Position numbers and translations under genes: made by a program. This document shows positions 571 through 17,317 of a DNA stretch of 23,356 nucleotides, one piece after another. Within the stretch, counting starts at the first letter, position 1. Each line of letters opens with the position of its first letter. The notes below the pieces were generated by a model, which had not been told where the DNA came from, did no database searches, and saw only the letters and a program-made list of their open reading frames with translations. The DNA comes from Octopus sinensis (Eukaryota): NCBI RefSeq assembly GCF_006345805.1, contig NW_021836583.1, forward strand, positions 1 through 23,356. The letters are read 5' to 3'.

Positions 571-766
571 CACACACACTGCCCTCTAAATGTTTACACT
601 GCCAATTATTCCTGTCGATGCATTAAACGTTCAACAGCAAGGTCACCCATAATTGCCCTTCCCTACCCAACCGACCGACCAACCAACCCACAAACCTCTC
701 TCAGAACCAGTTAAAATTAGAAAGACGTCAGTATGGCGTCTTTTATTTGTTCACTACAAGTGTTAG

Positions 767-1153
767 TGGAGGCGCAATGGCCCAGTGGTTAGGGCAGCGG
801 ACTCGCGGTCGTAGGATCGCGGTTTCGATTCCCAGACCGGGCGTTGTGAGTGTTTATTGAGCGAAAACACCTAAAAGCTCCACGAGGCTCCGGCAGGGGA
901 TGGTGGTGATCCCTGCTGTACTCTTTCGCCACAACTTTCTCTCACTCTTACTTCCTGTTTCTGTTGTACCTTGTATTTCAAGGGACCGGCCTTGTCACTC
1001 TCTGTGTCACGCTGAATATCCCCGAGAACTGCGTTAAGGGTACACGTGTCTGTGGAGTGCTCAGCCACTTACACGTTAATTTCACGAGCAGGCTGTTCCG
1101 TTGATCGGATCAACCGGAACCCTCGTCGTCGTAACCGACGGAGTGCTTCCATC
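767..1153 (+). mobile_element. Family B tRNA-derived SINE, full-length monomer (about 386 bp)
   Basis: A box tggcccagtgg, B box gtttcgattcc, tRNA-Arg-like head, (tcca) tail; 10-bp TSD caagtgttag at 757-766 and 1154-1163; near-identical copies at 12784 and 22125. Confidence 0.93.
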
Positions 1154-1344
1154 CAAGTGTTAGCCTCTCTGTAAAGCGTGTTTAAATATGAGCCACTAAT
1201 ATTTTTATGTTGTGGAAATACAGTAATTTCTTTTTCCGTTTCTATTTACATTTTGTTTTCTTGTTCCACCGTTCCTCATTCCGCTTTTTGCATTCACTAT
1301 TCCTCTCGATTTTTTTTTCTCGATTTCTCATAGACCGGAGTGGT

Positions 1345-2012: not shown

Positions 2013-2244
2013 ATTTCATTATTACCCACAAGGGGCTAAACACAGAGGGGACAAACAAGGACAGACATAGGTATTAAGTCGATTACATCGACCCCAGTGC
2101 GAAACTGGTACTTAATTTATCGACCCCGAAAGGATGAAAGGCAAAGTCGACCTCGGCGGAATTTGAACTCACAACGTAGCGGCAGACGAAATACCGCTAA
2201 GCATTTCGTCCGGCGCGCTAACGTTTCTGCCAGCTCACCGCCTT
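2013..2244 (-). mobile_element. Family C tRNA SINE monomer with tail type 1
   Basis: Head ggcggtgagctggcagaaacgttag, B box gagttcaaattcc, tail ccccttgtgggtaataatgaaat; 10-bp TSD tatgtaacct at 2003-2012 and 2245-2254. Confidence 0.92.
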
Positions 2245-2533
2245 TATGTAACCTGCTTCACGATTTGTGTGAAGGATTGTTAGTAACTCAATATCGTTGA
2301 ATGGAGTGCAAGTTATGTTGACATCTCGAAATTGTCCTCCATAACTCCGGGCCTAGCGTTTACTGAGAAGATTATTAGCAGGGGCAGTTTAACTCACATT
2401 ATGGGCAGAACGATCCGCCTTACTTTTAGGTTTTGACTGAAAAGCTATCCCAAGAGATTAAAATATCTTGTAAGAAAATCATACAAAGATACACTCACTG
2501 ACTCATTGACATTGAGAACACGCTCAAATATAT

Positions 2534-3917
2534 GGAATGGATGGAAGCACTCCGTCGGTTGCGACGACGAGGGTTCCGGTTGATCCGAATCAACGGAACA
2601 GCCTGCTCGTGAAATTAACGTGTAAGTGGCTGAGCACTCCACAGACACGTGCACCCTTAACGTAGTTCTCGGGGATATTCAGCGTGACACAGAGAGTGAC
2701 AAGGCTGGCCCCTTGAAATGGTGGAAGCACCCCGTCGGTTACGACGACGAGGGTTCCGGTTGATCCGAATCAACGGAACAGCCTGCTCGTGAAATTAACG
2801 TGTAAGTGGCTGAGCACTCCACAGACACGTGCACCCTTAACGTAGTTCTCGGGGATATTCAGCGTGACACAGAGAGTGACAAGGCCGGCCCTTTGAAATA
2901 CAGGTACAACAGAAACAGGAAGTAAGAGTGAGAGAAAGTTGTGGTGAAAGAGTACAGCAGGGATCACCACCATCCCCTGCCGGAGCCTCGGATGGAAGCA
3001 CTCCGTCGGTTACGACGACGAGGGTTCCGGTTGATCCGAATCAACGGAGCAGCCTGCTCGTGAAATTAACGTGTAAGTGGCTGAGTACTCCACAGACACG
3101 TGCACCCTTAACGTAGTTCTCGGGGATATTCAGCGTGACACAGAGAGTGACAAGGCCGGCCCCTTTGAAATACAGGTACAACAGAAACAGGAAGTAAGAG
3201 TGAGAGAAAGTTGTGGTGAAAGAGTACAGCAGGGATCACCACCATCCCCTGCCGGAGCCTCGGATGGAAGCACTCCGTCGGTTACGACGACGAGGGTTCC
3301 GGTTGATCCGATCAACGGAACAGCCTGCTCGTGAAATTAACGTGTAAGTGGCTGAGCACTCCACAGACACGTGCACCCTTAACGTAGTTCTCGGGGATAT
3401 TCAGCGTGACACAGAGAGTGACAAGGCCGGCCCTTTGAAATACAGGTACAACAGAAACAGGAAGTAAGAGTGAGAGAAAGTTGTGGTGAAAAAGTACAGC
3501 AGGGATCACCACCATCCCCTGCCGGAGACTCGGACGGAAGCACTCCGTCGGTTACGACGACGAGGGTTCCGGTTGATCCGATCAACGGAACAGCCTGCTC
3601 GTGAAATTAACGTGTAAGTGGCTGAGCACTCCACAGACACGTGCACCCTTAACGTAGTTCTCGGGGATATTCAGCGTGACACAGAGAGTGACAAGGCCGG
3701 CCCTTTGAAATACAGGTACAACAGAAACAGGAAGTAAGAGTGAGAGAAAGTTGTGGTGAAAGAGTACAGCAGGGATCACCACCATCCCCTGCCGGAGCCT
3801 CGTGGAGCTTTTTAGGTGTTTTCGCTCAATAAACACTCACAACGCCCGGTCTGGGAATCGAAACCGCGATCCTATGACCGCGAGTCCGCTGCCTTAACCA
3901 CTGGGCCATTGCGCCTC
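2534..3917 (-). mobile_element. Family B SINE concatemer: one full copy, three headless units of 270-272 bp and one 180-bp unit
   Basis: Tail motif tggaagcac starts at 2542, 2722, 2993, 3265 and 3535 (cggaagcac variant); single head at about 3803-3917; 13-bp TSD cgctcaaatatat at 2521-2533 and 3918-3930. Confidence 0.95.
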
Positions 3918-3966
3918 CGCTCAAATATATAAATGGCTAACAACTCGAAAATTATATTATATTTTG

Positions 3967-4373
3967 GCAAGGCGACGAACTAGCAGAATCGTTAGCACGT
4001 CGGGCGAAATGCTTAGCGGCATTTCGTCTGCCTTTACGTTCTGAGTTCAAATTCCGCCGAGGTCGACTTTGCCTTTCATGCTTTCGGGGTCGATAAATAA
4101 AGTACCAGTTACGCACTGGGGTTGATGTAATCGACTTAATCCCTTTGTCTGTCCTTGTTTGTCCCCCACCCGTGTTGAGCCCCTTGTGGGTAGTAAAGAA
4201 ATAGGTATTTCGTCTGCCGTTACGTTCTGAGTTCAAATTCCGCCGAGTTCGACTTTGCCTTTCCACCTTTCAGGTTCGATAAATTAAGTACTAGTTGTAT
4301 ACTGGGGTCGATATAATCGACTGGCCCCCTCCACAAAAATTTCTTGTCTTGTACCTAAAGTAGAAAAGAATAT
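3967..4373 (+). mobile_element. Family C SINE dimer (full unit with tail 1, then headless unit with tail 2)
   Basis: Head 3967-4060; junction gaaataggtatttcgtctgcc near 4198-4217; second unit ends ...aaatttcttgtcttgtacctaaagtagaaaagaatat; no clear TSD. Confidence 0.88.
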
Positions 4374-4420
4374 AAAGTTTTGAGAGAGGCTACATACAAT
4401 GTTGACACATTAACAATATA

Positions 4421-4889
4421 AGGGGGTAAAGACCCCCTTCGGTCATGAATGACCATGGGATTGCACCTAGAAAGTTACCCTCCTAGACACAAGTCCGGGC
4501 AAGGTTGTTTATGGAAGACCAGCAGTCGCCCATGCATACCGGCCTCCCCTCTTCACGCCACCAGTGTTATCCAAGGGAAAGACAAAGGTCGATACAGCTT
4601 GGCACCAGTGACGTCGCAACTCAAGTTTGTTTATGGAAGGCCAGCAGTCGTCCATGGATACCAGCCTCCCCTCTCCATGTCACTGATGTTATCCAAGGGA
4701 AAGGCAAAAGGGGCCGATACAGCTTGGCACCTGTGACGTCACAACTCATTTCTACAGCTGAGTGAACTGGAGCAACGTGAAATAAAGTGCCTTGCTCGAG
4801 AGCACAACACGCAGCCCGGTCCGGGATTCGAGCTCACAACCTCACGATCGTAAGCTCGAAGCTCTAACCACTGAGCTATGCGCCTTCAC
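4421..4889 (-). mobile_element. Family D CORE-type tRNA SINE with internal tandem duplication of about 122 bp
   Basis: Minus-strand head gtgaaggcgcatagctcagtggttagagc, B box gagctcgaatccc, CORE-like gagcaaggcactttatttcac; TSD cacattaacaatata at 4406-4420 and 4887-4901 (its first 3 nt overlap the head). Confidence 0.9.
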
Positions 4890-5128
4890 ATTAACAATAT
4901 ATGCTAATGACAACGGGGCCAAACCGATGGCAGGCAACAGTGCAGTTTATTCTTGCTGTTCTTAACAGGGTTCGGAAATGAAAAGGCTGCTTTTTGCAAC
5001 CTTGATATTCATGGAGGACCTGAAAAAATATCCCTGATCATTATTTCTTAACAATGTTGGTCAACAAAAAGGCATGGCTATTGTAGTTACATTTTAGCAA
5101 TAGCCACCACACGGTTTTCTGGCTGTGG

Positions 5129-5541
5129 TACTCTCTTTTTTACTCTTTTACTTGTTTCAGTCATTTGACTGCGGCCATGCTGGAGCACCGCCTTTAATCG
5201 AGCAACTCGACCCCGGGACTTATTCTTTGTAAGCCCAGTACTTATTCTATTGGTCTCTTTTGCCGAACCGCTAAGTAACGGGGACATAAACACACCAGCA
5301 TCGTTTGTCAAGCAATGCTAGGGAGACAAACACAGACACACAGACACACAAACACACACACGCATATATGTATACATATATACGACGGGCTTCTTTCAGT
5401 TTCCGTCTACCAAATCCACTCACAAGGCATTGGTCGGCCCGAGGCTATAGTAGAAGACACTTGCCCAAGGTGCCACGCAGTGGGACTGAACCCGGAATCA
5501 TGTGGTTGGTAAGCAAGCTACTTACCACACAGCCACTCCTG
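5129..5541 (-). mobile_element. Family A SINE
   Basis: Colinear with the 1345-1746 copy over its whole length. Confidence 0.92.
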
Positions 5542-5586
5542 CGCCTATGGTAGTGTACGAAGGATACTGAAAAGAGGTTGGATGAG

Positions 5587-5692
5587 AGGGGCTATAGCAG
5601 AAGACACATGCCACCCAGAATGCCGCGTAGTGAGACCGATTCCAAGACCCTATGGTTGGGCAAGCAAGCTTCTTACCCACACAGCCACGTTT
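5587..5692 (-). mobile_element. Old family A-like SINE head/CORE remnant
   Basis: ggctatagcagaagacacatgcc...aagcaagcttcttacccacacagcca is a decayed match to the family A 5' part. Confidence 0.7.
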
Positions 5693-6104
5693 CTGAATAT
5701 ATCTGCTAAAGAACATTAAATAATGAAAGAACATTTTACAACAAGAATCAAAAGAGCAACAACAATAATTACAACAAGGCTTTAGATAGGAGACGGTTCT
5801 GAAGCTTTTATGGTAAGATGCTTAATTCTTTGAGGAACATTCCACCATTCTCTGTCTTAGAGATACCATGGCATCGCGTTTAGTGAAAGAATGCACCTAT
5901 TATTTAGATCTGTGGCTGGTACTGACTATTATCAATACTAACTGGCTGTACAACACTCTAGATAATACCTGGCATCACTGCTACTACTGCGGCTACTGCT
6001 GCTGCGTCTACACAAGCCATCAATTCTCTCATTAGGCGTCCATTCAGGCGTAGAATATAACTATCTTTGCTATAGCACCCACCTAGCTCCCTCTCATACT
6101 GGCA

Positions 6105-6275
6105 ATCTGTGTATGCGTGTGTATGTGTGTGTGTGTGTGTGCCTCTCTCTCTCTCTTTCTCACTATATGTATATATATACACACACACATGCATACATAC
6201 ACACACATATTATATATACATAGATATATATATACATATACATACATATATATATATATATGTAATATTATATAT

Positions 6276-6363
<88 letters not shown>

Positions 6364-6379
6364 ATATATATACAATATA

Positions 6380-6445
<66 letters not shown>

Positions 6446-6605
6446 TATATGTATATATATATATTATATATATATATATCATGTTTATATATATACACAT
6501 GTAAGTGTATATATGCGCGCATATATAAATATATTGATATCTGGTCTATAAATCTTTATGTGTCTGTTTCACTCTCACCTTTATTCTCTCCTCCCTCTCT
6601 CTCTC

Positions 6606-6636
<31 letters not shown>

Positions 6637-6725
6637 GTGTGTGTGAGAGAGAAAGAGAGAGAGATAAAGAAAGAGATAAAGAGAGCAAGCGAGAGAGAAC
6701 GGACACAAGCCGTCTCTATATATAT
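6105..6725. repeat. Long (AT)n microsatellite with (GT)n and (CT)n/(GA)n flanks
   Basis: Near-pure AT run at about 6210-6500, CT/GA runs at 6590-6700. Confidence 0.95.
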
Positions 6726-6921
6726 CAACACATCTAATGACCAATCATTTACATTGTATCTGTTCACGTGACCTTTCTGACTTTTCTCTTGTTTTGTTTT
6801 CTTCCAATTATCTTTCATCTTCCGTTCCAACTCTCTGGAGATAATGAGGATCAAAGAACAACACAGGAGGCAATTAGTTATGTGGTTGTCCAGTAAACGA
6901 GAGATAAGGAGTTCGAGTTAC

Positions 6922-7325
6922 ACTCTCTTTTACTCTTTTACTCTTTTACTTGTTTCAGTCATTTGACTGCGGCCATGCTGGAGCACCGCCTTTTAGTCGA
7001 GCAACTCGACCACGGGACTTATTCTTTGTAAGCCCAGTACTTATTCTATCGGTCTCTTTTGCCGAACCGCTAAGTGACGTGGACGTAAACACACCAGCAT
7101 CGGTTGTCAAGCAATGCTAGGAGGACAAACACAGACACACAAACTTATATATATATACATATAAACGACAGGCTTCTTTCAGTTTCCGTCTACCAAATCC
7201 ACTCACAAGGCTTTGGTCAGCCCGGGGCTATAGCAGAAGACACTTGCCCAAGATGCCACGCAGTGGGACTGAACCCGGAACCATGTGGTTGGTTAGCAAG
7301 CTACTTACCACACAGCCACTCCTGC
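6922..7325 (-). mobile_element. Family A SINE
   Basis: Colinear with the other family A copies; (ctctttta)n tail on the plus strand. Confidence 0.92.
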
Positions 7326-7354
7326 TGTTAGTTTTTTTTTTCTATTTTTAAGTA

Positions 7355-7450
7355 ATCCTGTGTAATTAAGAAGCTTCTTTTGCAGTCATACGATTTCAGG
7401 TTCAATCCCACAGCACGGCACATTAGGCAAATGTCTTCTGTTATAATTCC
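7355..7450 (+). mobile_element. Old family A-like SINE head remnant
   Basis: ggttcaatcccacagcacggcacattaggcaaatgtcttctgttata is a decayed match to the family A B box and CORE; a possible matching tail lies at about 8010-8056. Confidence 0.65.
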
Positions 7451-7505
7451 AGTATCCCCGCCTGACACGCGGGAGACCGGCGTTCGATTCCTCGCCAGGG
7501 AGCCA
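7451..7505 (+). pseudogene. 5'-truncated tRNA-Asp(GTC)-derived fragment ending in CCA
   Basis: agtatccccgcctgacacgcgggagaccggcgttcgattcctcgccagggagcca matches the conserved eukaryotic tRNA-Asp from about position 21: anticodon arm cccgc-ctg[t>a]cac-gcggg, T loop ttcgatt, discriminator G, then CCA. Confidence 0.85.
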
Positions 7506-7509
7506 TATT

Positions 7510-7688
7510 CAGGAGTAGCTCTGTGGTAAGAAGCTTGCTTTCCAGCCACAGGATTCCCGGTTCAGTCCCACTGCGTGGCACCTTGGGCAAGTGTCTTCTA
7601 CTATAGCCACGGGCCGGCCAAAGCCTTGTGAGTAACTTTGGTTGACAGAAACTGAAAGAAGCCGTCGTATATATGTATTAATATATAT

Positions 7689-7766
<78 letters not shown>

Positions 7767-7995
7767 GTATGTGTGTGTGTGTATGCATGTATTTGTGTGT
7801 CTGTGTTTGTCTCCCCAACATCGCTTGACAACCGATGCTGGTTTTTTTACGTCCCCGTAACTCAACGGTTCGGCAAAAGAGTCCGATAGAATAAGTACTA
7901 GGCTTACAAAAGAATAAGTCCTGGCGTCGATTTTTTTTCGACTAAAGGCGGTGCTCCAGCATGGCCGCAGTGAAATTATTGAAACAAGTAAAATA
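7510..7995 (+). mobile_element. Family A SINE with expanded internal (TA)n
   Basis: Starts caggagtagctctgtggtaag, CORE accttgggcaagtgtcttct, tail ggcggtgctccagcatggccgcag...gaaacaagtaaaa. Confidence 0.9.
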
Positions 7996-8088
7996 AATTT
8001 AAGAAAAAGAATATGGCGGTGCCCCAACATGGCCACAGCTCATGAGCTGAAACTAGAATCAATCAATCAATCAATTAATCAATATATA

Positions 8089-8381
8089 TTCACTCACGAT
8101 CGTGTGGTCGCGAGTTCGATTCCTGGCGGCGCCTTGTGTCCTTGAGCAAGACACTTTATTTCACGTTGCTCCAGTCCACTCAACTAGCAAAGATGAGTAG
8201 TACCTGTATTTCAAAGGGCCAGCCTTGTTACATTCTCTTTCATGATGATTCTCCCTGAAAACTACGTTAAGGCTGCACGTGTCTGTGGAGTGCTCAGCCA
8301 CTTGCATGTTAATTTCATGAGCAGGCTGTTCCGTTGATTTGATCAACTGGAACCCTCGTCGTCGTAAGCGACGGAGTGCCA
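8089..8381 (+). mobile_element. SINE with family D-like head/CORE and family B 3' tail
   Basis: B box gagttcgattcc, CORE ttgagcaagacactttatttcac; from about 8200 matches the family B tail (gtacctgtatttcaaagggcc...cgtcgtcgtaagcgacggagtgcca). Confidence 0.85.
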
Positions 8382-8392
8382 TATATATATAT

Positions 8393-8779
8393 GTGTGTGG
8401 TAAGTAGCTTGCTAACCAACCACATGGTTCCGGGTTCAGTCCCACTGCGTGGCATCTTGGGCAAGTGTCTTCTGCTATAGCCCCGGGCCGACCAATGCCT
8501 TGTGAGTGGATTTGGTAGACGGAAACTGAAAGAAGCCTGTCGTATATATGTATGTATATATATATATATATGTGTGTGTGTGTATGTGTTTGTCCACCTA
8601 GCATTGCTTGACAACCGATGCTGGTGTGTTTACGTCCCCGTCACTTAGCGGTTCGGCAAAAGAGACCGATAGAATAAGTACTGGGCTTACAAAGAATAAG
8701 TCCTGGGGTCGAATTTTCGACTAAATGCGGTGCTCCAGCATGGCCGCAGTCAAATGACTGAAACAAGTAAAAAAGAGTA
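8393..8779 (+). mobile_element. Family A SINE, slightly 5'-truncated
   Basis: Colinear with family A from tgtgtggtaagtagc to gaaacaagtaaaaaagag. Confidence 0.92.
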
Positions 8780-8796
8780 TATATATATATATATAC

Positions 8797-8829
<33 letters not shown>

Positions 8830-9074
8830 TGTATGTATGTATGTATGTATGTATGTATGTATATATACATATATATTGATGGAATTTTATAAATACTTAA
8901 TGCATCGCTACGCACGTTTCTACAAATCACATGAGACTCTTAAGATCACCGTCCGTATTACAGTGATGTTTACAGTGTAATCCGTAGTATCCATGTTCAT
9001 TGGATTGATCATCATCATTGATGCATTTCGTAAAGCGATATAGTATAAATACATACATAACAATCTGCGCGTGC

Positions 9075-9116
<42 letters not shown>

Positions 9117-9144
9117 CACTGAAGCCATTCATACATATATGCAT

Positions 9145-9195
<51 letters not shown>

Positions 9196-9269
9196 TTTTC
9201 TCTGTCAGTCACTCACACATTAACTCACTACAAAAAGTGAATAAAATATTTCAGTTATATCTCTTTCTT

Positions 9270-9308
<39 letters not shown>

Positions 9309-9404
9309 ATACACCAGCAACATTACTCTCTCTCTATCTCTTCAGACGCACTAACGAAAGCAATTCACATACACAGCACACATTTTGTCTCGCACATCCC
9401 ATCA

Positions 9405-9439
<35 letters not shown>

Positions 9440-9440
9440 G
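8780..9440. repeat. Microsatellite cluster (TA)n, (TATG)n, (GT)n, (CT)n, (CA)n with short unique spacers
   Basis: Direct reading; pure runs at about 8803-8860, 9078-9114, 9150-9192, 9408-9435. Confidence 0.9.
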
Positions 9441-9825
9441 TCAGTTCTTCCGCTTCATGCCAACTTCAAAAGAACTTCACTCGTACAATGGCGCTCTCTC
9501 TGTCTCTTTCGCTTTCACGCCGACTTCAAAAGATCCCCTTTCCCCCCAACCTCATATTAAAAAATTAAAAATTCTTCAAAAATGTAAATAAACACGCGTG
9601 GTTTATAAATAGTTTCTAAGTGACAGTCGTGTATTCCCATACCGAAAGATCGCCCAATGTTTTAATGATTAGACAGAGGTAAAATAGAATAGCTCTCAGA
9701 AACAGACTACGTACAAATTCGTTCTTCACAACTTCTGAAGCTGTTTTCTGACAGGGGGCAGTGGGGGTCAGGAAATTCTCATACAGCTGGAAGCTCCAAT
9801 CGAAACAGGGGTCCCGAAATGGTAA

Positions 9826-9840
9826 GGTTGAGAAACGCTG
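9826..9840. mobile_element. Possible orphan hAT (Charlie-like) terminal inverted repeat
   Basis: ggttgagaaacgctg is the reverse complement of cagcgtttctcaacc, resembling Charlie-type ends; no partner TIR seen. Confidence 0.3.
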
Positions 9841-9889
9841 TTATAGATTATGCCTAACCGAAAACGATCACAGCCACATCATCCAAACA

Positions 9890-9918
9890 GACCGGGTGAA
9901 ACCGGGCTTAGCTGCTAG
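9890..9918 (+). mobile_element. Possible Helitron 3' terminus
   Basis: ccgg-gtgaaa-ccgg hairpin followed 10 nt later by CTAG then T; 5' end not identified. Confidence 0.4.
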
Positions 9919-9922
9919 TAAA

Positions 9923-10001
9923 CATATATATATATATATATATATAACATATATATATATATATAATATATATATATATTTATAAACAATATATATATAT
10001 A

Positions 10002-10040
<39 letters not shown>
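9923..10040. repeat. (AT)n microsatellite
   Basis: Direct reading. Confidence 0.95.
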
Positions 10041-10046
<6 letters not shown>

Positions 10047-10161
10047 CGACCTCGAAAGGATGAAAGGCAAAGTCGACCTCGGGAATTTGAACTCAGAACG
10101 CAACGGCAGACGAAATACGGCTACGCATTTCGCCCGGCGTGCTAACGATTCTGCCAGCTCA
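10041..10161 (-). mobile_element. Family C SINE 5' half
   Basis: Matches the family C head and central domain; the 3' part is absent and the (AT)n abuts it. Confidence 0.88.
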
Positions 10162-10404
10162 CAGTTTACCGTTTCTCGAATCACTGCACTTTGTTCTTCT
10201 TTGGTGCTCATTGCTATTGGAGTGGCCATGCTTACACAGTAAAACCAGAAAGAAAAATGGCACGATCATGTTCAAACTTCGATCACATGACCACAATAAT
10301 ACCAACTATAAACACGCGTGCGCAGAAGGTGGTGTGACAATAGTAAAAATATGTAATGGCGAAAGTGCGGATATTTTTTGACTTCCCTTCGTATATGTAT
10401 GAGT

Positions 10405-10637
10405 GTGTGTGTGTCTGTGTGAGTTAGTTTTTGTGTCTGTAACGGTTATCGCGCTCCACTACTTGGCAACCGGTGTTGGTTACTTTACGTCCCTATAATT
10501 TAAAAGTTTGGCGAGACAGACCGAACTTGAAACGAAAAACATAACTATGGGGCTGATTTGCTCGCCGAAATACCCCCTCAAAGCGTTGCTCCATCATGGC
10601 CGCAAGCTAAAAACTGAGACAAGCGAAAGAGTACAAG
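10405..10637 (+). mobile_element. Old family A-like 3' half
   Basis: Decayed matches: caaccggtgttggttactttacgtccc, gcgttgctccatcatggccgca, ctgagacaagcgaaagag. Confidence 0.6.
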
Positions 10638-11118
10638 AAAGGAAAAATCGAAAAGAACAGAAATGAAATCAATCGTAACAGAAAATATCGGATCAATCTT
10701 GGTAGAAATATTTGTATTCTTCGAATCACTGCCAAATGCTCTTATTCTGAGCCTTTAAGCCGTAGATCCGATTCCATTTTTACATTTCTACGGCAGCCTC
10801 TGTTATCTCCAACCATTCCTAGTTTGCTTTGTTTTTATTCTTCGCCTTTGTAGTTTTTTTTTCCAGCAAGGATTGGCTAAAATAGAAGGTTAACCAGTCG
10901 CTTTTTCACTTTTAGGTCTCTTACCATTATTTCCGTTCTTTTTTTTTTTTTTTGGTTTTTGGTTTTGTAAATTGACTTCTGGCATTAAAAACCATATATA
11001 GTGAATTATTTTTACGGAGATGTACTTCCATAGCAAGTAACCTGATCTGAGATCGTGTGCTGGAACGAAAACAATAGCAGCGTGGAAGGTGTTTATAAGC
11101 TATTTAAGAAACACACAG

Positions 11119-11194
11119 AAACCGTTAGATTCACTTCAACATTTAAAATATTTTGGCAAATTAAATTTAAATGTTGAAGTGAATCTAACGGTTT
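11119..11194. repeat. Perfect 29-bp inverted repeat with 18-nt spacer
   Basis: aaaccgttagattcacttcaacatttaaa (11119-11147) is the reverse complement of tttaaatgttgaagtgaatctaacggttt (11166-11194). Confidence 0.95.
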
Positions 11195-11221
11195 TTAGTG
11201 TATTATTATTATAATTATTAT

Positions 11222-11332
11222 TGAGTGAGAGAGCAGTGCATGCCATCAAAGTGACACTGGGGTAAAATATACGAAGCCCAGCATACCCATCATGACTACC
11301 CGTGTCTGATAAGGGTACACCAGGCACATGCA
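11222..11332 (-). mobile_element. Short non-repetitive block embedded in (TAA)n, probable truncated 3' end of a TAA-targeting retroelement
   Basis: Flanked on both sides by (ATT)n; the minus strand ends ...ctctctcactc-aataataat, the same architecture as the adjacent Dong-like copy; identity inferred. Confidence 0.45.
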
Positions 11333-11411
11333 TTATTATTATTATTATTGTTATTATTATTATTAATTATTATTATTATTATTCTTATTATTATTATTAT
11401 TATTATTATTA

Positions 11412-12236
11412 TCATTCAGTAGTTTTAATTTTATAACGTGCTTTCACTTCACTACCGAGCGCAGCTTTGTGTGCCCTGGGTATGTGCTGTGGTTTGCTGT
11501 GATGCTCTGATGGTTACTGTATTGAAACTGTTTTGCGTAGGATGTTTACAGTGCCCAGTAGTGCAATTTTCTGTATGTTATCTATGTTTGTAAGTCCTGG
11601 TGTTTTTGTTATGTATTTGTCTGAATATTTTTTTTATCATGCCTAATGCACCTACTATGATAGGAATTGTTTCTGTTTTTAGATTCCACATTCTAGTTAC
11701 CTCTATTTCCAGGTCCTTGTATTTTGAAAGTTTCTCCATTTCTTTTAGAGACACGTTGTCATCTGCTGGTATTGATACATTTTTTTCTTCATGATCTCTG
11801 ACAACTATATCTGGTCTGTTGGCCTTAATTTCTTTATCTGTGTGTATTGGCATATCCCAGAGTATGGTTGCTTTCTCGTTTTCTGTGACCTTTTCTGGTG
11901 TGTGCCTATACCATCTTTTTTCTGTTGTTATTCCATAATGTTGGCATAGCTTCCAGTGTATGTAGGTTCCAACTCTGTCATGTCTGTGAATATATTCCTT
12001 CTTAGCCAGGACTGGGCAGCCGAGATAATATGATTTATTGTTTCTTGTCCATCTCCACATATTCTGCAGTTACTTGTTATATTTCTTTTCATTACATGTT
12101 TTTGGTAATTTCTGGTGGGGAGGCTTTGGTCTTCTGCTGCAATTAAAAATCCCTCTGTCTCTGCTTTGAGTCCTGAGCTTCTCAACCATTGCTGGGATTT
12201 TTCTATGCCTATACCATCTTTTTTATCTGTTATCAT
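11412..12236 (-). mobile_element. 5'-truncated, frameshifted R4/Dong-clade non-LTR retrotransposon (CCHC knuckle, restriction-like endonuclease, 3' UTR)
   Basis: ORFs 11928..12236 and 11578..12060 read WLRSSGLKAETEGFLIAAEDQSL...CRICGDGQETINHII(S)GCPVLAKKEYIHRHDRV...ILWDMPIHTDKEIKANRPDIVV...EKLSKYKDLEIEV...PIIVGALG; (TAA)n on both sides. Confidence 0.9.
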
Positions 12237-12439
12237 TATTATTATTATTATTTATTATCATTATTATTATTATTAAAGTACTTTATAAAGTGCAAAATGA
12301 GTTAGAATAAAGAAATAGATGTGTCAGCCTTCTATCAAAAAATATTGTCAAAATATAATAATTGCCCAAAATGAGCAGCTGTCAAAGTTTACGATATACC
12401 TTACTACAAATTTCATACTTGATGACTTAATAATAATAG

Positions 12440-12690
12440 CCGCCTATCAAATCGACTCACAGGGATCTGGTCAGCTCGAGGCTATAGTAGAAGACAAGCC
12501 CAAAGTGCCGCATGAATTACAGGTGTAAGCCATCCGAAACGCTTCCTTACAGTTTCCGGCTACCTAAATTCACTGTGATGTCATGACTCGATCCAAAACT
12601 GTCTTAAAGGTACATGATGACATCTCTCGGTATCGAACTTGGGGTCTCACACTGTGAAGCAAACTTTTTAGCCACTCAACTACACCCCAC
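12440..12690 (-). mobile_element. Very old family A-like SINE remnants
   Basis: ggtcagctcgaggctatagtagaagacaagcccaaagtgccgca and acagtttccggctacctaaattcac resemble family A. Confidence 0.5.
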
Positions 12691-12783
12691 TTGATTCTGC
12701 ATTTATTTATATATTGTATGTGTCTGTCTACATAATTGTGAACAAGCGTACGTATATAAATCTATATTTATAATGATGTAAGT

Positions 12784-13172
12784 GGATGGAAGCACTCCGT
12801 CGGTTACGACGACGAGGGTTCCGGTTGATCCGAATCAACGGAACAGCCTGCTCGTGAAATTAACGTGTAAGTGGCTGAGCACTCCTCAGACACGTGTACC
12901 CTTAACATAGTTCTCGGGGATATTCAGCGTGACACAGAGAGTGACAAGGCCGGACCCTTGAAATACAGGTACAACAGAAACAGGAAGTAAGAGTGAGAGA
13001 AAGTTGTGGTGAAAGAGTACAGCAGGGATCACCACCATCCCCTGCCGGAGCCTCGTGGAGCTTTTAGGTGTTTTCGCTCAATAAACACTCACAACGCCCG
13101 GTCTGGGAATCGAAACCGCGATCCTATGACCGCAAGTCCGCTGCCCCAACCACTGGGCCATTGCGCCTCCAC
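12784..13172 (-). mobile_element. Family B SINE monomer
   Basis: Full head and tail; TSD aatgatgtaagt (12772-12783) versus aattatgtaagt (13173-13184), 11/12. Confidence 0.93.
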
Positions 13173-13185
13173 AATTATGTAAGTA

Positions 13186-14693
13186 CAGGGTGTTCGGGCT
13201 AAATTTCCCAGTTTGCCTAAAAAAAAACACAATATCACATCCAAAGATAAAAGTATTTATAGAATCATAAAATATAAACCAACTAAATTAGGGATGGAGG
13301 ATAACATTTTACTCAAATTATCCGCCCTTAGCCTCCACAATGGCCTCGAGGCGAATCTGGAGCCTAATGCATGCGTTTGACACTGCGTCCCTGAGAAGAT
13401 TTTCGACCACTTCCTTGATCTTGGTCTCTAGTTCGGCCTTGGTGTTTCAGGCAGACCGGTTGGTGTCTCTCTCAACCACACCACACACATAATAACCCAT
13501 TGGATTACAGTCAGGGGATTAGAAGGCCAGAAAATGGGTCTGGTGAAGTCGTAGTAATTCTCTGACAAACACGTCTGACCCTTTCCGGTGGTATGGCAAG
13601 GAGCCGAATTCTGCAGTCATACATAGGGCCTTCCAGTAGCAATCCTCTTCAGCCAGGGTCTGACCACAGTCTCTCGCACTTCATATAGCCGTGTTGAGGG
13701 TAAGGCCACCTTGGTTGAAGATGGCATGACGCTTCCCTTGCTGAAAACACATGCTATGACCCTGACAGTTTGTGGGAGCTTGGTTTCGCAGTCTCCATTG
13801 CAGCCGTCCATGCCACACCTTACAGCTTTGCGGTAGCATTCAAGGCGGCGAGCTGGCAAAAGGTTAGCACGCCGGGCGAAATGCGTAGCCATATTTCGTC
13901 TGCCGCTACGTTCTGAGTTCAAATTCCGCCGAGGTCCACTTTGCTTTTCATTCTTTCAGGGTCGATAAATTAAGTACCAGTTATGCACTGGAGTCGATGT
14001 ATTCGACTTAATCCCTTTGTCTGTCCTTGTTTGTCCTCTCTGTGTTTAGCCCCTTGTGGGTAGTAAAGAAATAGGTATTTCGTCTGCCGTTACGTTCTGA
14101 GTTCAAATTCCGCCGAGGTCGACTTTGCCTTTCATCCTTTCGGGGTCGATAAATTAAGTACCAGTTACGCACTGCGGTCGATATAATCGACTTAATCCGT
14201 TTGTCTGTTCTTGTTTGTCCTCTCTGTGTTTAGCCCCTTGTGGGTAGTAAAGAAATAAGTAATTCGTCTGCCGTTACGTTCTGAGTTCAAATTCCGCCGA
14301 GGTCAACTTTGCCTTTCATCCTTTCGGGGTCGATAAAGTAAGTACCAGTTACGCACTGCGGTCGATGTAATCGACTTAATCCGTTTGTCTGTCCTTGTTT
14401 GTCCCCTCTCTGTGTTTAGCCCCTTGTGGGTAGTAAAGAAATAGGTAGTATTCACAGAACATTGAGCAGCTCTTCTGATGAAGCATTCTGATACCCTGTA
14501 AAAATCGTCATGATACAAGCAGCTCTTTGCCAATATTCAGATGGCTTCCAGTCTTCTATGTCAACTAATGTTTTCTCAATTACAATTTTAACATTGCTGC
14601 TCTCCAACGCCGTTGACTATTTACCAATAAATTAAGCTGTTCCTGAGAAAACAGAGGATATAAAACATAGCCAAATTTAGCCCGAACATCCTG
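13186..14693 (-). mobile_element. Internally deleted Tc1/mariner DNA transposon, DD37D (maT-like)
   Basis: 21-bp TIRs cagggtgttcgggctaaattt (13186-13206, TA upstream) and aaatttagcccgaacatcctg (14673-14693); minus strand reads PYV*LQ[N]SAPCHT...FWPSN(S)PDCNPM[G]YYV, with 37 residues between the decayed second and third catalytic positions. Confidence 0.85.
13843..14443 (+). mobile_element. Family C SINE trimer inserted in the Tc1/mariner
   Basis: One head, units restarting at 13892, 14076 and 14260 (period 184); TSD ggtagcattca (13832-13842) versus ggtagtattca (14444-14454), 10/11. Confidence 0.93.
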
Positions 14694-14699
14694 CATGTA

Positions 14700-14812
14700 T
14701 AAATGTTCGTGTGTGTATGTGTGTATATATGCACATGAATGCTTGTATGTGTGTTTATATATACATATGTATATGTATACATATATATATATATATAATT
14801 GTTTGTATGTGT

Positions 14813-14861
<49 letters not shown>

Positions 14862-15546
14862 TATAAACATATATATATAAACGTTTGTGTGCGTAAATAC
14901 ATGTATGAATGTATATATATATATATATATATATAAATGCTTGTATGCGTATGTATATATGTATGTGTACATATATATAAATGTTAGTATGAGTGTGTAT
15001 ATATATATATAATATATAATATATATATATATATTATATATATATATGTATAAATGTTTGTATGTGTGTGTATATATTTATCAATTATATCGAAAGAAAA
15101 AGAAAGGAAAGTCAAGACAAGTGGACACACAACGAGAGAACATTGAGAACGTATCGATTTTATTTATTAAATCGTTTATCGATCTCTTTGCTGCCAATAG
15201 TTGTTCCCTAAATCCTCTTATGATTTCGAAGTTGGTTCTATGTTGATACATTTGCACAATAGCCGCATATAATATGGAATTTGCTTCGACAAAAACCGGG
15301 CAAGATGGCGGCGAAGAACATTTCCATGCCGCATGCGTGTCTGCATTTGTATGTCTGCGTACAAATATGTGTGTATATATGCGTCTCTCTCTCACTCTCT
15401 TTGTCTTTCTCTTTCTTTTTCTCTCTGTCTTTCTCCCTCTCCCCGCTCTCTCTCTATATATATATATATATGATATGAATTGTGTGTGTATGTATGAATA
15501 TATACGTGTGTGTGTATATATACATATATATATATACAAGTGTGTG

Positions 15547-15598
<52 letters not shown>

Positions 15599-15951
15599 AG
15601 TGTGTATATATGCGTCTCTCTCTCACTCTCTTTGTCTTTCTCTTTCTTTTTCTATCTGTATTCCTCGCTCTCCCCTCTATCTCTCTCTATATATAATATG
15701 AATTGTGTGTGTATGTATAAATATATACGTGTGTGTGTATATATAAATATATATATATATACAAGTGTGTGTATGTATATATATATATATATATATATTA
15801 ATAAATATAAGGGTAGCAAAAAATTCTAGAAAGAATTTTCCGCTACCAGCGGTCAAGTGAGAAAGAAAAAATAGTCAAAGACTATATATATATACAAGTG
15901 TGTATGTATGTGTCTTTGTAGCTGTATATGTGTATATGTATATATATATAG

Positions 15952-15988
<37 letters not shown>

Positions 15989-16020
15989 GTATGTTTCTAT
16001 GTAGGTGTATATATGCATAA
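14700..16020. repeat. AT/GT/CT microsatellite field, including a 231-bp tandem duplication at about 15369-15800
   Basis: gcgtctctctctcactctctttgtc occurs at 15381 and 15612; a unique island lies at about 15080-15360. Confidence 0.88.
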
Positions 16021-16839
16021 GTATAGGGTTGTATACAAACACACATTGTGTGTATGATTGAAATAAAAGTAAGAGAAGACATTAGCCGGTAAATATAAAC
16101 GATTTTGGTGAGTTTTGGGGCAGTCAGACATGGGTAAGTTTTTATTGAAGGTGGGGTGGTTGACACGGTTGGCAGCAAAAAAAAAGCGCCAAATGGAAGA
16201 CGGACAAAGAAAGAAAGAAAGAAAAAAGAATCACAGAAAAAAATATTCTCACTACATAAATAAAGCGATTGGCAAGTGGACATCGATGCAGGATGAAGTG
16301 AGTCTGAGACCAAGACAAACAAGAAGGAATTTGAATGGTTTCAGAGATACCACGACCACTACTACTGTTACTACTTCACACATTAACCCTATCTGCTCTC
16401 GGTACAAGAGCTGATATTTTGTGGGACGGGACTGTAAAGGGGAACTGGTTGCTTCTTTACACTTTTGGGGTGCAACTTGGGTGCAACACAATTTCCTTTC
16501 CTTTTGTTTCTAGAAACTACCAGTCAGGAACGAAAAGCAAGTTTAAAAATATATATAATTCTTTATTTTCTTGGTTCAACAATGAAACACGATGGTATGC
16601 TGATATCCACCTAGTTCAACGCAGCAAGGCTGAATTCAAACGTTTGTAAGCTTTACAACAATTCAGCAGCAGTAGACCAGGTTAAATCCTAAGCGTCTGG
16701 GACAGGAGAATAGGCTGATCACAGGATTCAAAATATACGTCCTTTCTCTTCTATCGCCGTGTCTCAAATCCCCGAACGCTATTAAGGAACGCTATTAAGG
16801 AACGCAACGTCATTCTTCAGGACTAATAAATTATATCAA

Positions 16840-16997
16840 GACCCTCACCCAGTGCTCTGTTGGTGCTTTTTTCATCGACTACGAAAGGATGAAGTGCAGA
16901 GTCGACCCCAGCGGAATTTGAACTCTGAGCATAAAGACGAACGAAATGCCACCAAGCATTTTGTCCGGTGTGCTAACGATTCTGCCAGCTCGTAGCC
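16840..16997 (-). mobile_element. Older family C SINE, 5' part
   Basis: tgctaacgattctgccagctcg, gcggaatttgaactc and catcgactacgaaaggatgaa match family C. Confidence 0.8.
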
Positions 16998-17000
16998 TGT

Positions 17001-17157
17001 TATAATAATAATCCTTCCTACTATAGGTGTAAGGCCTGAAATTTGCAGGGAGGCGGATAGCCGATTAAAGACTCCAGTGTTTCGCTAGTACTTAATTCAT
17101 CGACCCCGAAATGATAAAAGGCGAAGTTGACATCGGTGGAATTTGAACTCAGAACGG
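17001..17157 (-). mobile_element. 5'-truncated family C SINE with tail type 2
   Basis: Minus strand cgttctgagttcaaattcc...aaatttcaggccttacacctatagtaggaaggattatta. Confidence 0.82.
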
Positions 17158-17317
17158 AAATTGTACACGGACAGAATGCACCTTTGCCGAAGGACAAGAA
17201 GCCAAACAGATACAGTGCCGAACTTAAACAATGCCGAACGGACATTAAACAGAACGGACAAGAGGCCGAAAAGACATACCAAAGTTAAATTGTTTGATAA
17301 TCATTTTATTCCTAGAA

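What the first reader, a model, noticed from the sequence alone, without database searches (positions are those of the whole stretch)
2013..17157. System-level signal: template-jumping retroposition producing SINE concatemers and RNA chimeras
Seen: family B (2534-3917) and family C (13843-14443) occur as one Pol III head followed by headless 3' units inside one TSD; family D (4421-4889) has a diverged internal duplication inside one TSD. A family C dimer joins two different tails at the trimer's junction, and a CCA-ended tRNA-Asp piece sits directly 5' of a SINE. Established: non-LTR reverse transcriptases such as R2 can jump from the 5' end of one RNA to the 3' end of another, and U6-L1 chimeras arise this way. 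Inference: the LINE machinery mobilising these SINEs chains RNAs, including site-specifically cleaved SINE RNAs and mature tRNA, in single insertion events. At least four such products lie within 15 kb, which seems many.
Basis: partly seen in the sequence, partly recalled or inferred. Interest (0 to 1): 0.75.

Follow-up and report, generated by a model that had tools for sequence, protein, structure and literature searches.

The report
SINE concatemers and a tRNA–SINE fusion
A SINE-packed stretch of an invertebrate (probably cephalopod) genome holds several retroposons built from one promoter-bearing head plus extra headless copies. These most likely formed when a reverse transcriptase re-started on a second RNA, a known type of event, but how often it happens de novo could not be tested here.

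Summary
The structures are real. Family B (2534-3917, minus strand) has one tRNA-like head, four 270-bp units and one 184-bp unit, inside a perfect 13-bp target-site duplication (TSD). Family C (13843-14443) has a head and two headless units inside a 10/11 TSD. A C dimer (3968-4373) has the same junction but two non-homologous tails. A CCA-ended tRNA-Asp 3' piece (7451-7505) lies 4 nt from the 5' end of a full-length family A SINE.

Each junction joins the canonical retroposon 3' terminus, as seen in independent monomers, to a fixed internal point. The C junction recurs with two tail types. B units are no more alike (97.8-98.9% among the four full-length units) than unlinked monomers (98.2%). 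This favours junctions made at the RNA/cDNA level over later DNA duplication.

Nothing separates de novo chaining at each insertion from ordinary retrocopies of multimeric source genes, since the consensus units have no Pol III terminator. Repeated insertion at one nick is also not excluded.

Family D does not support the model. Its 86%-identical duplication is internal and predates a 15/15 TSD. The C dimer and the tRNA fusion have no convincing TSD. No ribozyme was found, and RNA cleavage is not required. No source-genome sequence was reachable, so a census was impossible.

The parts
2534..3917 (-). Family B concatemer: tRNA-like head (3917-3802), four 270-bp body units (3801-3532, 3531-3262, 3261-2990, 2989-2719) and one 184-bp 3' unit (2718-2534)
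   Evidence: Junctions 1-3 read GCTTCC(A/G)TCC|GAG(G/T)CTCC. Junction 4 reads GCTTCCACCA|TTTCAAGG. The final tail is CTTCCATCCATTCC.
2521..2533 (.). TSD copy of the B concatemer (partner at 3918-3930), CGCTCAAATATAT, 13/13
3918..3930 (.). Second TSD copy of the B concatemer
765..1155 (+). Family B monomer M1, used as reference for the canonical 5' and 3' termini. TSD CAAGTGTTAG 10/10; one extra T at the 5' junction.
12783..13172 (-). Family B monomer M2. It ends ...CTTCCATCC directly before the TSD ACTTACAT(C/A)ATT; two extra bases (GT) at the 5' junction.
22123..22513 (-). Family B monomer M3 with tail variant ...GCATTCC; TSD 11/12
13843..14443 (+). Family C trimer: T1 with head (13843-14076), T2 (14077-14261), T3 (14262-14443). 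The extra units start at ATTTCGTCTGCC and keep the B box only.
   Evidence: TSD GGTAGCATTCA (13832-13842) / GGTAGTATTCA (14444-14454).
3968..4373 (+). Family C dimer: full-length C1 unit with C1 tail (3968-4206) joined at the same junction to a headless unit with a C2-type tail (4207-4373). No convincing TSD.
2013..2244 (-). Family C1 monomer, used as reference; TSD (sense strand) AGGTTACATA, 10/10
4421..4886 (-). Family D SINE with an internal 124-bp duplication (4500-4623 / 4622-4748, 85.8% identical) inside a 15/15 TSD (4406-4420 / 4887-4901)
7451..7505 (+). 3' part (positions about 21-76) of a tRNA-Asp-like sequence ending in CCA
7506..8013 (+). TATT spacer, then an old (about 87% identical), essentially full-length family A SINE with an expanded internal (TA)n
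16775..17160 (-). A 5'-truncated C2-type unit with an (ATT)n tail (17160-17001) lying within 2 bp of the full head of an older C-like SINE (16998-16775). This is a second 'tail-to-5'-end' junction.
8093..8382 (+). Older composite SINE ('B-old'): D-type head and central domain joined to the B-type 3' module of about 185 nt. The shared module starts about 10 nt upstream of where unit U5 starts.

Best explanation
These are composite retrocopies whose internal junctions were made at the RNA/cDNA level by the LINE reverse transcriptase that moves these SINEs.

Proposed mechanism:
- While copying one SINE RNA, the enzyme stops at a defined internal point, or at the RNA's 5' end. It then uses the nascent cDNA 3' end as primer to start again at the normal initiation site on the 3' tail of a second RNA, which may be another SINE RNA or a mature tRNA.
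- The whole chain is then integrated once, so it is flanked by one TSD.
- In family C the fixed breakpoint has an explanation. The cDNA end there (complement of GGU/A, near the tip of a 12-bp hairpin) mimics the nicked-target primer that normally pairs with the SINE's terminal ...AAAUA(GGU).
- In family B one junction type was formed and then repeated. A second type (U4/U5, 3-nt ATT overlap) was formed separately.

What is shown:
- single TSDs around the B and C arrays
- canonical 3' termini at every junction
- recurrence of the C junction with two tail types
- the CCA end of the tRNA piece

What is inferred:
- that the enzyme re-primes
- that this happened at these particular insertions rather than in an ancestral source copy
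- why the breakpoints are fixed
For: (1) Single TSDs enclose the whole arrays: B 13/13, C trimer 10/11.

(2) Upstream units end exactly where independent monomers end. B units U1-U3 end ...GCTTCC(A/G)TCC, like M1 and M2 immediately before their own TSDs. This locus's own final tail is 5 nt longer (CTTCCATCCATTCC), so the junctions are not copies of the local element/flank boundary.

(3) The tails inside the B array differ (CATCC, CACCATT, CATCCATTCC), as tails of separate reverse-transcription starts do.

(4) The C junction AAATAGG|TATTTCG occurs at two loci and with two non-homologous downstream tails: C1-C1 twice and C1-C2 once. A simple duplication cannot give that.

(5) All C tails, internal or terminal, are followed by GGT. 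The head's internal site reads GC(G/C)GTATTTCG, which gives 2-4 nt of overlap. In the MFE fold the breakpoint lies just 3' of the loop of a 12-bp hairpin.

(6) Full-length B units are 97.8-98.9% identical to each other (pairs involving the short unit U5: 96.7-98.3% over 179-180 nt), no closer than the unlinked monomers M1 and M2 (98.2%). C unit T1 is as far from T2/T3 (93%) as T2/T3 are from unlinked copies (92.4%). So there is no sign of recent in-place duplication or homogenisation.

(7) Two further junctions join a complete RNA 3' end to the true 5' end of a full-length SINE. They are tRNA-Asp...CCA + TATT + family A and C2...(ATT)n + C-old head. Extra bases (T, GT, TATT) at 5' junctions show an enzyme that adds untemplated nucleotides.

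(8) Modules are shared between families: D-type head on a B-type 3' module at 8093-8382. This matches the module exchange by template switching discussed for mollusc SINEs (PMC4758252).

(9) Chimeric retrocopies made by LINE enzymes are established in mammals, including tRNA/L1 and Alu/L1 (10.1101/2025.02.02.635956; PMC4476161, listed but not read here).
Against: - Three of the four B junctions are identical with no added bases, although this enzyme often adds bases. That fits one event copied afterwards better than three independent jumps.
- T2 and T3 of the C trimer share two derived transversions absent from T1 and from unlinked copies, and are 96.7% alike. This fits a later duplication or a shared source.
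- The B main junction has only about 1 nt of overlap, so the primer-mimic idea does not explain it.
- No TSD could be shown for the C dimer or for the tRNA-SINE fusion.
- The partner LINE of B and C was not identified.
- Only one window (23 kb, about 25 SINE insertions) could be examined.
- De novo chaining and retrocopying of a multimeric source gene predict the same local sequence.
Confidence: 0.42

Rival explanations
1. Ordinary retrocopies of multimeric source genes. The head-plus-units architecture arose once, long ago, by any mechanism, in a source copy. Pol III reads through the whole array, and the window simply holds its progeny. No chaining happened at these insertions.
For: - Consensus B and C units contain no T4 run. 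The only internal T4/T5 runs are private mutations, and the first flanking terminators lie 5-128 bp downstream.
- Junctions are identical within B (three times) and across the two C loci.
- T2 and T3 share derived variants.
- Family D shows that an internal duplication can be inherited from a source gene: 14% diverged repeats inside a 15/15 TSD.
Against: - The C junction occurs with two non-homologous downstream tails and with different unit numbers (2 and 3).
- The B array holds two junction types and three tail lengths.
- The T insertion/deletion in the hairpin loop TTGA(T)TCGG separates U1-U2 from U3-U5 and also varies among monomers.
- Several masters, or recombination between them, would be needed.
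Confidence: 0.28
2. Post-insertion tandem duplication at the DNA level. A monomer inserted, then replication slippage or unequal crossing-over between short repeats expanded the body units in place.
For: - Three B junctions are identical.
- Neighbouring units share the T insertion/deletion state (U1-U2 versus U3-U5).
- T2 and T3 are sister units.
- Short overlaps exist at the breakpoints: GGT(A) in C and ATT at U4/U5.
- Transposable elements are a known source of tandem repeats (PMC9659126 and PMC3389668, listed; I did not read them).
Against: - The junction ends coincide with the canonical retroposon terminus seen in other loci, not with arbitrary points. In B they do not coincide with this locus's own longer terminus.
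- The C1-C2 dimer is not a duplication.
- Units are no more similar to each other than unlinked monomers are.
- Two of the three C1 loci with intact ends, and one of four B loci, are multimeric. That would require an implausibly high rate of short-overlap duplication.
Confidence: 0.12
3. Sequential independent insertions at the same spot. New, 5'-truncated copies were primed again at the nick site that each insertion regenerates at its own tail. Their 5' ends were joined by short overlap to the resident tail. This is an insertion hot spot rather than one event.
For: - SINE density is extreme: four insertions lie in about 350 bp of ancestral DNA between 2013 and 4901, and SINE cover is at least 36.5%.
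- Target sites of C start with the same GGT that ends the element.
- A LINE in the same window sits inside arrays of its own (AAT)n tail repeat.
- The C dimer, the tRNA-A fusion and the C2/C-old pair have no enclosing TSD.
- T1 carries more private changes (7) than T2 or T3 (3 each), as expected if T1 were older.
Against: - Normal insertions by these elements make 9-15-bp TSDs, yet no TSD copy lies between units.
- This model needs blunt or deleting second-strand cleavage four times running in B.
- B units show no age gradient.
Confidence: 0.1
4. RNA ligation before reverse transcription. Cleaved SINE RNA fragments and tRNA were joined end to end by an RNA ligase of the RtcB type, and the ligated RNA was then retrotransposed.
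For: - RNA ligation is listed as an alternative to template switching for U6/L1 and Alu/L1 chimeras (10.1101/2025.02.02.635956).
- A fixed breakpoint near a hairpin loop in the tRNA-like head of C could be a nuclease site.
Against: - Pol III SINE transcripts should run on into flanking DNA up to a T run. The upstream partner's physical 3' end is therefore not the canonical SINE terminus seen at the junctions, unless it is trimmed precisely.
- No ribozyme or known processing motif was found.
- The 4 extra bases between CCA and family A fit untemplated addition by a polymerase better than ligation.
Confidence: 0.05
5. Assembly artefact: the number of nearly identical 270-bp units is mis-assembled.
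For: The repeats are 98-99% identical over 1.1 kb. Raw reads were not available.
Against: - Each unit carries its own private substitutions, and there are two junction types.
- The array is bounded by a perfect TSD.
- The C trimer units differ by 3-7%.
Confidence: 0.03

Closest known systems
Chimeric retrocopies made by LINE-1 (U6/L1, tRNA/L1, Alu/L1; Buzdin-type chimeras)
   Same: - Two RNA-derived parts lie in the same orientation.
- The upstream part ends at its native RNA 3' end.
- The downstream retroelement is 5'-truncated or full length.
- One TSD encloses both (PMC4476161, listed but not read here).
   Different: - Here the partners are mostly copies of the same SINE family (homotypic chains of up to five units).
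- The breakpoints are fixed rather than scattered.
- The tails are specific sequences or short repeats, not poly(A).
- In primates most tRNA parts are 5' halves in antisense orientation. Here the tRNA part is a sense 3' piece with CCA.
- A TSD is shown only for the B and C arrays.
End-to-end template jumping by the R2 reverse transcriptase (Bibillo and Eickbush; cited from my own knowledge)
   Same: - The junctions tRNA-CCA + TATT + family A and C2 tail + C-old head join a complete 3' end to a true 5' end with a few extra bases, as R2 does in vitro.
- A LINE with an R2-like C-terminal region is present in the window.
   Different: - The B and C array junctions start at internal points, not at RNA 5' ends.
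- The acceptor start is the canonical SINE terminus rather than the physical end of a Pol III transcript. That looks more like re-priming at the normal initiation site.
- No link between that LINE and families B or C1 was shown.
Composite or multimeric SINE families fixed in a source gene (dimeric Alu, Twin SINE, tRNA dimers and trimers, Bov-tA/Bov-A2; cited from my own knowledge and PMC4758252)
   Same: - Head plus repeated body or monomer units are propagated as one element.
- Modules are exchanged between families (B-old at 8093-8382).
   Different: - Those families have one fixed architecture.
- Here unit number (1, 2, 3, 5), junction type and tail type all vary among the few copies seen.
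Tandem repeats and minisatellites derived from transposable elements (for example the SVA VNTR)
   Same: A tandem array of element-derived units lies within one element.
   Different: The unit boundaries sit at the retroposon's canonical 3' terminus, and units are not homogenised relative to unlinked copies.
Retrozymes: tandem small retroelements carrying hammerhead ribozymes, known in metazoans including molluscs (PMC11722881, listed but not read here)
   Same: Tandem units of about 170-400 bp that could come from processed or circular RNA.
   Different: No hammerhead, HDV-like or other ribozyme matched in Rfam at E<=1 to 10. Also, the arrays start with a Pol III head.

Membership tests
tRNA-derived SINE (families A, B, C, D) | Internal Pol III promoter: A box TRGCNNAGTGG and B box GGTTCGANNCC in a tRNA-like 5' head | tested here: met
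   Read directly from the sequence.
- B: TGGCCCAGTGG and GTTTCGATTCC.
- D: TAGCTCAGTGG and GCTCGAATCC.
- C: TGGCAGAATCG and GAGTTCAAATTCC.
ARAGORN finds no tRNA gene, and Rfam's tRNA model does not reach E<=10 on the B, C and D heads scanned (3780-4900); family A heads were not scanned at that threshold. So the heads are degenerate derivatives, not tRNA genes.
tRNA-derived SINE (families A, B, C, D) | Dispersed copies, each with its own TSD and a family-specific 3' tail | tested here: met
   TSDs of 10-15 bp for three B monomers, the B array, the C monomer, the C trimer and D. Seven A copies were aligned.
Template-switch chimeric retrocopy | One TSD encloses all parts | tested here: inconclusive
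   Met for the B array (13/13) and the C trimer (10/11). Not met for the C dimer, the tRNA-A fusion or the C2/C-old pair.
Template-switch chimeric retrocopy | The upstream part ends at the native 3' end of its RNA (or at the normal reverse-transcription start) | tested here: met
   B units end as monomers M1 and M2 do. C units end in the canonical AAATA(GGT). The tRNA piece ends in CCA.
Template-switch chimeric retrocopy | The parts come from separate RNA molecules joined during one insertion | not testable with these tools
   This needs a genome-wide census, orthologous loci or an assay. In-window hints only: the C1/C2 tail difference and the T insertion/deletion within the B array.
Multimeric source-gene SINE family | Many loci share the same multimer architecture and junction | tested here: inconclusive
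   The C junction is shared by two loci, but with different unit numbers and tails. Only one B multimer was seen among four B loci.
Multimeric source-gene SINE family | The array can be transcribed as one Pol III unit (no internal terminator) | tested here: met
   There is no T4 run in the consensus units.
Post-insertion tandem duplication of a transposable element | Units more alike than unlinked copies of the same age; arbitrary unit boundaries | tested here: not met
   Full-length B units are 97.8-98.9% identical versus 98.2% for M1-M2. Boundaries sit at the canonical terminus. The exception is T2-T3 at 96.7%, against about 93% to T1.
Post-insertion tandem duplication of a transposable element | Copy number differs between haplotypes or related species | not testable with these tools
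   No other assembly or reads were available.
Ribozyme-bearing tandem retroelement (retrozyme, or HDV-like 5' processing) | A self-cleaving ribozyme motif at or near the unit boundary | tested here: not met
   Rfam scans of the whole window at E<=1 and of 3780-4900 and 7330-7620 at E<=10 gave no ribozyme family. A new ribozyme class cannot be excluded.
R2-superclade LINE with a restriction-like endonuclease (fragment at 12236-11332) | CCHC zinc knuckle and C-terminal endonuclease region homologous to R2 protein | tested here: inconclusive
   - On the window ORF, zf-RVT is below Pfam's cut-off (21.5 bits versus 27.5). The 86%-identical relative P0001 just reaches it (27.6 bits).
- P0001 matches the R2 protein 9nl2_A, residues 898-1020, at E=0.0017.
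- The reverse-transcriptase domain is not present in the window.

The most novel reading that the evidence does not exclude
In this genome a LINE reverse transcriptase routinely re-primes from the growing cDNA onto fresh SINE RNAs at defined internal sites: a hairpin tip plus a 2-4-nt mimic of the target-site primer. This would build head-plus-headless-unit concatemers and tRNA-SINE fusions de novo in a sizeable share of insertions. Such a process would continuously generate new composite SINEs and SINE-derived tandem arrays, and would explain the module shuffling seen among mollusc SINE families.
Probability: 0.25. Interest if true: 0.6.

Novelty: new variant of a known kind. Interest (0 to 1): 0.4.

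Why it matters
How composite SINEs and SINE-derived tandem arrays arise is usually inferred from old, fixed families. If these young arrays, with perfect TSDs and about 1-2% divergence between units, were chained during insertion, this genome would offer a live view of that process.

It would also provide a natural system with fixed, sequence-defined switch points. A census and retrotransposition assays could then test template switching, or re-priming, by non-LTR reverse transcriptases.

If the arrays are instead progeny of multimeric source genes, the finding is routine repeat annotation. It would still matter for repeat libraries, because such arrays can be mis-called as satellites or as several separate insertions.

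Tried and rejected
(1) Census through SINE-derived peptides. A B junction-spanning ORF and a family A ORF were searched against 5.8 billion proteins and gave no candidates. An exact look-up of a B ORF also found nothing.

(2) Exact 19-mer of the B 3' region in metagenome and prokaryote genome collections. The 23 hits are chance matches, most of them to one conserved bacterial mobile gene. None extends beyond 28 nt.

(3) The third protein search, with the LINE C-terminal ORF, returned only contigs of 1 kb or less from close relatives (L024 at 91% DNA identity, L025), plus cnidarian and echinoderm proteins. This is of no use for a SINE census.

(4) Ribozyme idea for 'site-specific cleavage'. There were no Rfam ribozyme hits. 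I also saw no CUGANGA hammerhead core in the B unit, and no convincing HDV-like P1 pairing near the unit start (and reading the sequence by eye). Rejected as unsupported.

(5) Nested-insertion model for the C arrays, in which a full copy inserts into the head of another. Rejected because no partial head lies upstream of the trimer or the dimer.

(6) Using the T insertion/deletion in the B hairpin loop and the C/T site at 'CG(C/T)TACG' in C as subfamily markers for separate RNA origins. All four combinations of two B sites occur, and the expected number of chance coincidences in C is about 0.2. Both markers are therefore too weak.

(7) TSD search for a longer chain: tRNA-Asp, then family A, then an A-like 3' fragment with an (AATC)n tail (8014-8090). 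The only match was a 6-bp AT-rich one with one mismatch, which is not significant.

(8) Literature search for the SINE sequences themselves found no paper. Octopus repeat papers do not mention SINE multimers.

(9) The organism could not be confirmed with any tool. 'Octopus-like' rests on my memory of cephalopod SINE heads and on the repeat landscape.

Full report
WHAT THE WINDOW IS

It is eukaryotic DNA full of AT/TA microsatellites and short interspersed elements. A self-comparison finds about 25 SINE insertions.
- Family A has seven copies.
- Family B has three monomers and one array.
- Family C has a monomer, a dimer, a trimer and fragments.
- Family D has one copy.
- There are also older relatives.

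Families recognisable by in-window repetition cover at least 36.5% of the window and 42.5% of the finding's span. ARAGORN finds no tRNA gene, and Rfam finds no tRNA or ribozyme at E<=1. The SINE heads carry readable A and B boxes. I think the organism is a cephalopod, but no tool could confirm that.

Family B array (minus strand, 3917->2534).
- It consists of a 116-bp tRNA-like head, four 270-bp units and a last unit of 184 bp. TRF reports 4.0 copies at 98%.
- The whole array lies between two perfect copies of a 13-bp TSD.
- Junctions 1-3 read ...GCTTCC(A/G)TCC|GAG(G/T)CTCCGG. The next unit therefore starts at monomer position 119.
- Junction 4 reads ...GCTTCCACCA|TTTCAAGG, so that unit starts near position 208.

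Family C trimer (13843-14443).
- It has a head-bearing unit and two units that start at ATTTCGTCTGCC. Those two have lost the A box but keep the B box.
- It lies inside a 10/11 TSD.

Family C dimer (3968-4373).
- It has the same junction.
- Its second unit ends in a tail homologous to the C2-type tail at 17001-17058 (0 of 500 shuffles reach the score) and unrelated to the C1 tail.

Family D (4421-4886).
- It has an internal 124-bp duplication, 85.8% identical, inside a perfect 15-bp TSD.

tRNA-Asp piece (7451-7505).
- It matches the 3' two-thirds of tRNA-Asp at 50/55 bases and ends in CCA.
- Four bases later (TATT) a family A SINE begins within about 1 nt of the family's 5' end, as defined by four other copies with flanks.

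WHAT THE JUNCTIONS SAY

The most informative fact is where the upstream units end.
- Independent B monomers M1 and M2 end ...CTTCCATCC immediately before their own TSDs. Units U1-U3 end the same way.
- This locus's own final tail is 5 nt longer (CTTCCATCCATTCC), and U4's is different again (CTTCCACCATT).
- The internal junctions therefore carry the canonical reverse-transcription start of the family, with tail-length variation. They are neither arbitrary breakpoints nor copies of the local element/flank boundary.
- This argues that the junctions were created when RNA was copied, not by later DNA duplication.

In family C every tail, internal or terminal, is followed by GGT: AAATA-GGT-ATTTCG at junctions, and AAATA-GGTAGTATTC and AAATA-GGTTACATA at the ends.
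- Both 5' TSD copies also begin with GGT. The SINE RNA end and the nicked target therefore probably pair through GGU.
- The internal breakpoint in the head reads GC(G/C)GT|ATTTCG, which is the same 2-4 nt. In the minimum-free-energy fold it lies just 3' of the loop of a 12-bp hairpin.
- A nascent cDNA ending there would look like the normal primer for a new C RNA. That explains a fixed breakpoint without any RNA cleavage. This step is inference.
- For B's main junction the overlap is only about 1 nt, so this idea does not cover it. The U4/U5 junction has a 3-nt ATT overlap.

AGE AND RELATEDNESS OF UNITS

- Full-length B units are 97.8-98.9% identical to each other (pairs involving the short unit U5: 96.7-98.3% over 179-180 nt), and 97.0-97.8% identical to M1 and M2. 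M1 and M2, which are unlinked, are 98.2% identical.
- Each B unit has 0-3 private changes, against 3-6 in the monomers.
- So the array is somewhat younger than the monomers. Its units are not homogenised, which argues against recent unequal crossing-over.
- In the C trimer, T2 and T3 are 96.7% alike and share two derived transversions. T1 is 93% from both, about as far as unlinked copies are (92.4%). This fits T2/T3 coming from one source or from a later duplication, with T1 from another source or an older event.
- Candidate subfamily markers (the T insertion/deletion in the B hairpin loop, a C/T site in C) are too few and too prone to recurrence to decide.

WHAT CANNOT BE SEPARATED

Consensus B and C units have no T4 run, so a multimeric source copy could be transcribed whole by Pol III and retrocopied. 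That gives exactly the local picture seen here.
- In favour of copying: three identical B junctions with no added bases. The same enzyme left T, GT and TATT at other 5' junctions, so one junction-forming event followed by copying fits at least as well as three jumps.
- Against a single master: the C junction with two tail types, the different unit numbers, and the two junction types and three tail lengths in the B array. These point to at least four separate junction-forming events among about 25 insertions.

Sequential re-insertion at the regenerated nick is possible in such a dense hot spot. Four SINE insertions lie in about 350 bp of ancestral DNA between 2013 and 4901. But this model should leave TSD copies between units, and none is there.

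RNA ligation before reverse transcription is an alternative discussed for L1 chimeras. It would need precise trimming of Pol III transcripts to the canonical terminus.

PARTS OF THE FINDING THAT DO NOT HOLD

- Family D's duplication is internal and far older than its insertion. It was inherited from a source gene and says nothing about chaining at insertion.
- The C dimer and the tRNA-A fusion lack a demonstrable TSD. The A copy there is old (about 87% identical) and sits between fragments of older A-like elements. 'Single insertion event' is therefore unproven for them.
- Even so, the tRNA piece is the cleanest sign of a jump from a SINE RNA 5' end to a mature tRNA 3' end: sense orientation, CCA, four extra bases, then a full-length SINE.
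- A similar tail-to-true-5'-end junction lies at 17001/16998.

COMPARISON WITH KNOWN SYSTEMS

- Chimeric retrocopies made by LINE-1 are established, including U6/L1, tRNA/L1 and Alu/L1 (PMC4476161, listed but not read here).
- End-to-end template jumping by the R2 enzyme is established (my own knowledge).
- Template switching is the usual explanation for module exchange among SINE families, including those of molluscs (PMC4758252).
- The window itself shows such exchange: a D-type head on the B-type 3' module at 8093-8382.
- What differs here is homotypic chains of up to five units at fixed internal breakpoints, in young elements with intact TSDs.
- I found no description of SINE multimers in octopus repeat papers.

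VERDICT

- An RNA-level origin of the junctions is the best reading. Whether it happened at these insertions is open: 0.42 for recurrent de novo chaining against 0.28 for multimeric source genes.
- This is a variant of a known kind of event.
- Interest is moderate (0.4), because the decisive census, orthologue comparison and assays are straightforward but could not be done here.
- No step had to be referred.

Noticed in passing
window 11332-12236 (-) and 20428-20614 (+): - Two 3' fragments of one LINE family end in (AAT)n and sit directly downstream of (TAA)n arrays, as if the element inserts into its own tail repeat.
- The ORF has a zf-RVT zinc knuckle that scores below Pfam's cut-off.
- A close relative (P0001) matches the C-terminal region of R2 protein at E=0.0017.
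- The DNA is 91% identical to a Logan contig (SRR7158634) that also ends in (AAT)n.
- It may be a Dong/R4-like element. The C2-type SINE tail also ends in (ATT)n.
   Followed up: partly
window 2013-4901: A SINE insertion hot spot. The C1 monomer, the B array, the C dimer and D are separated by only 278, 38 and 33 bp of non-SINE DNA, so four insertions lie in about 350 bp of ancestral sequence.
   Followed up: partly
window 8093-8382 (+), compared with 4421-4886 and 765-1155: An older composite SINE joins a D-type head and central domain (resembling a Deu-type domain, from memory) to the B-type 3' module of about 185 nt. This is module shuffling between families. B unit U5 starts about 10 nt inside this shared module.
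   Followed up: partly
window 3802-3815 and the unit junctions (e.g. 3527-3540), minus strand: The head/body boundary of the B monomer (AAAAGCTCCAC|GAGG) resembles the tail/body junction of the array (GTGCTTCCATCC|GAGG). The B monomer itself may be an old product of the same joining process.
   Followed up: no
window 8014-8090 (+): A 5'-truncated 3' fragment of an A-like SINE with an (AATC)n tail directly follows the tail of the family A copy that carries the tRNA piece. A three-RNA chain is conceivable, but no TSD supports it.
   Followed up: partly
window 13500-13842 and 14455-14640: The C trimer interrupts non-repetitive sequence with an open frame on the minus strand. The 101-aa ORF at 13617-13922 runs into the SINE head. 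It has no Pfam match and its origin is unknown.
   Followed up: partly
window 17303-17386, 19580-19650 (-), 22990-23035 (-); also 17613-17831 / 19245-19457 (-): Further repeat families, not part of the finding, recur in the window at 88-92% identity. One has a possible tRNA-like B box near 22991. They were not characterised.
   Followed up: no
window 5585-5697 (-) and 7345-7450 (+): Older short elements with an A-like head lie immediately 5' of younger full-length A copies in the same orientation, twice. This may reflect a target preference of family A for its relatives.
   Followed up: no
loci L002-L014, L019-L021, L023 (bacterial contigs): A 27-28-nt stretch of the B 3' region matches one nearly invariant bacterial gene found in many soil metagenome contigs and MAGs. 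I judged this a chance match to a widespread mobile gene.
   Followed up: partly
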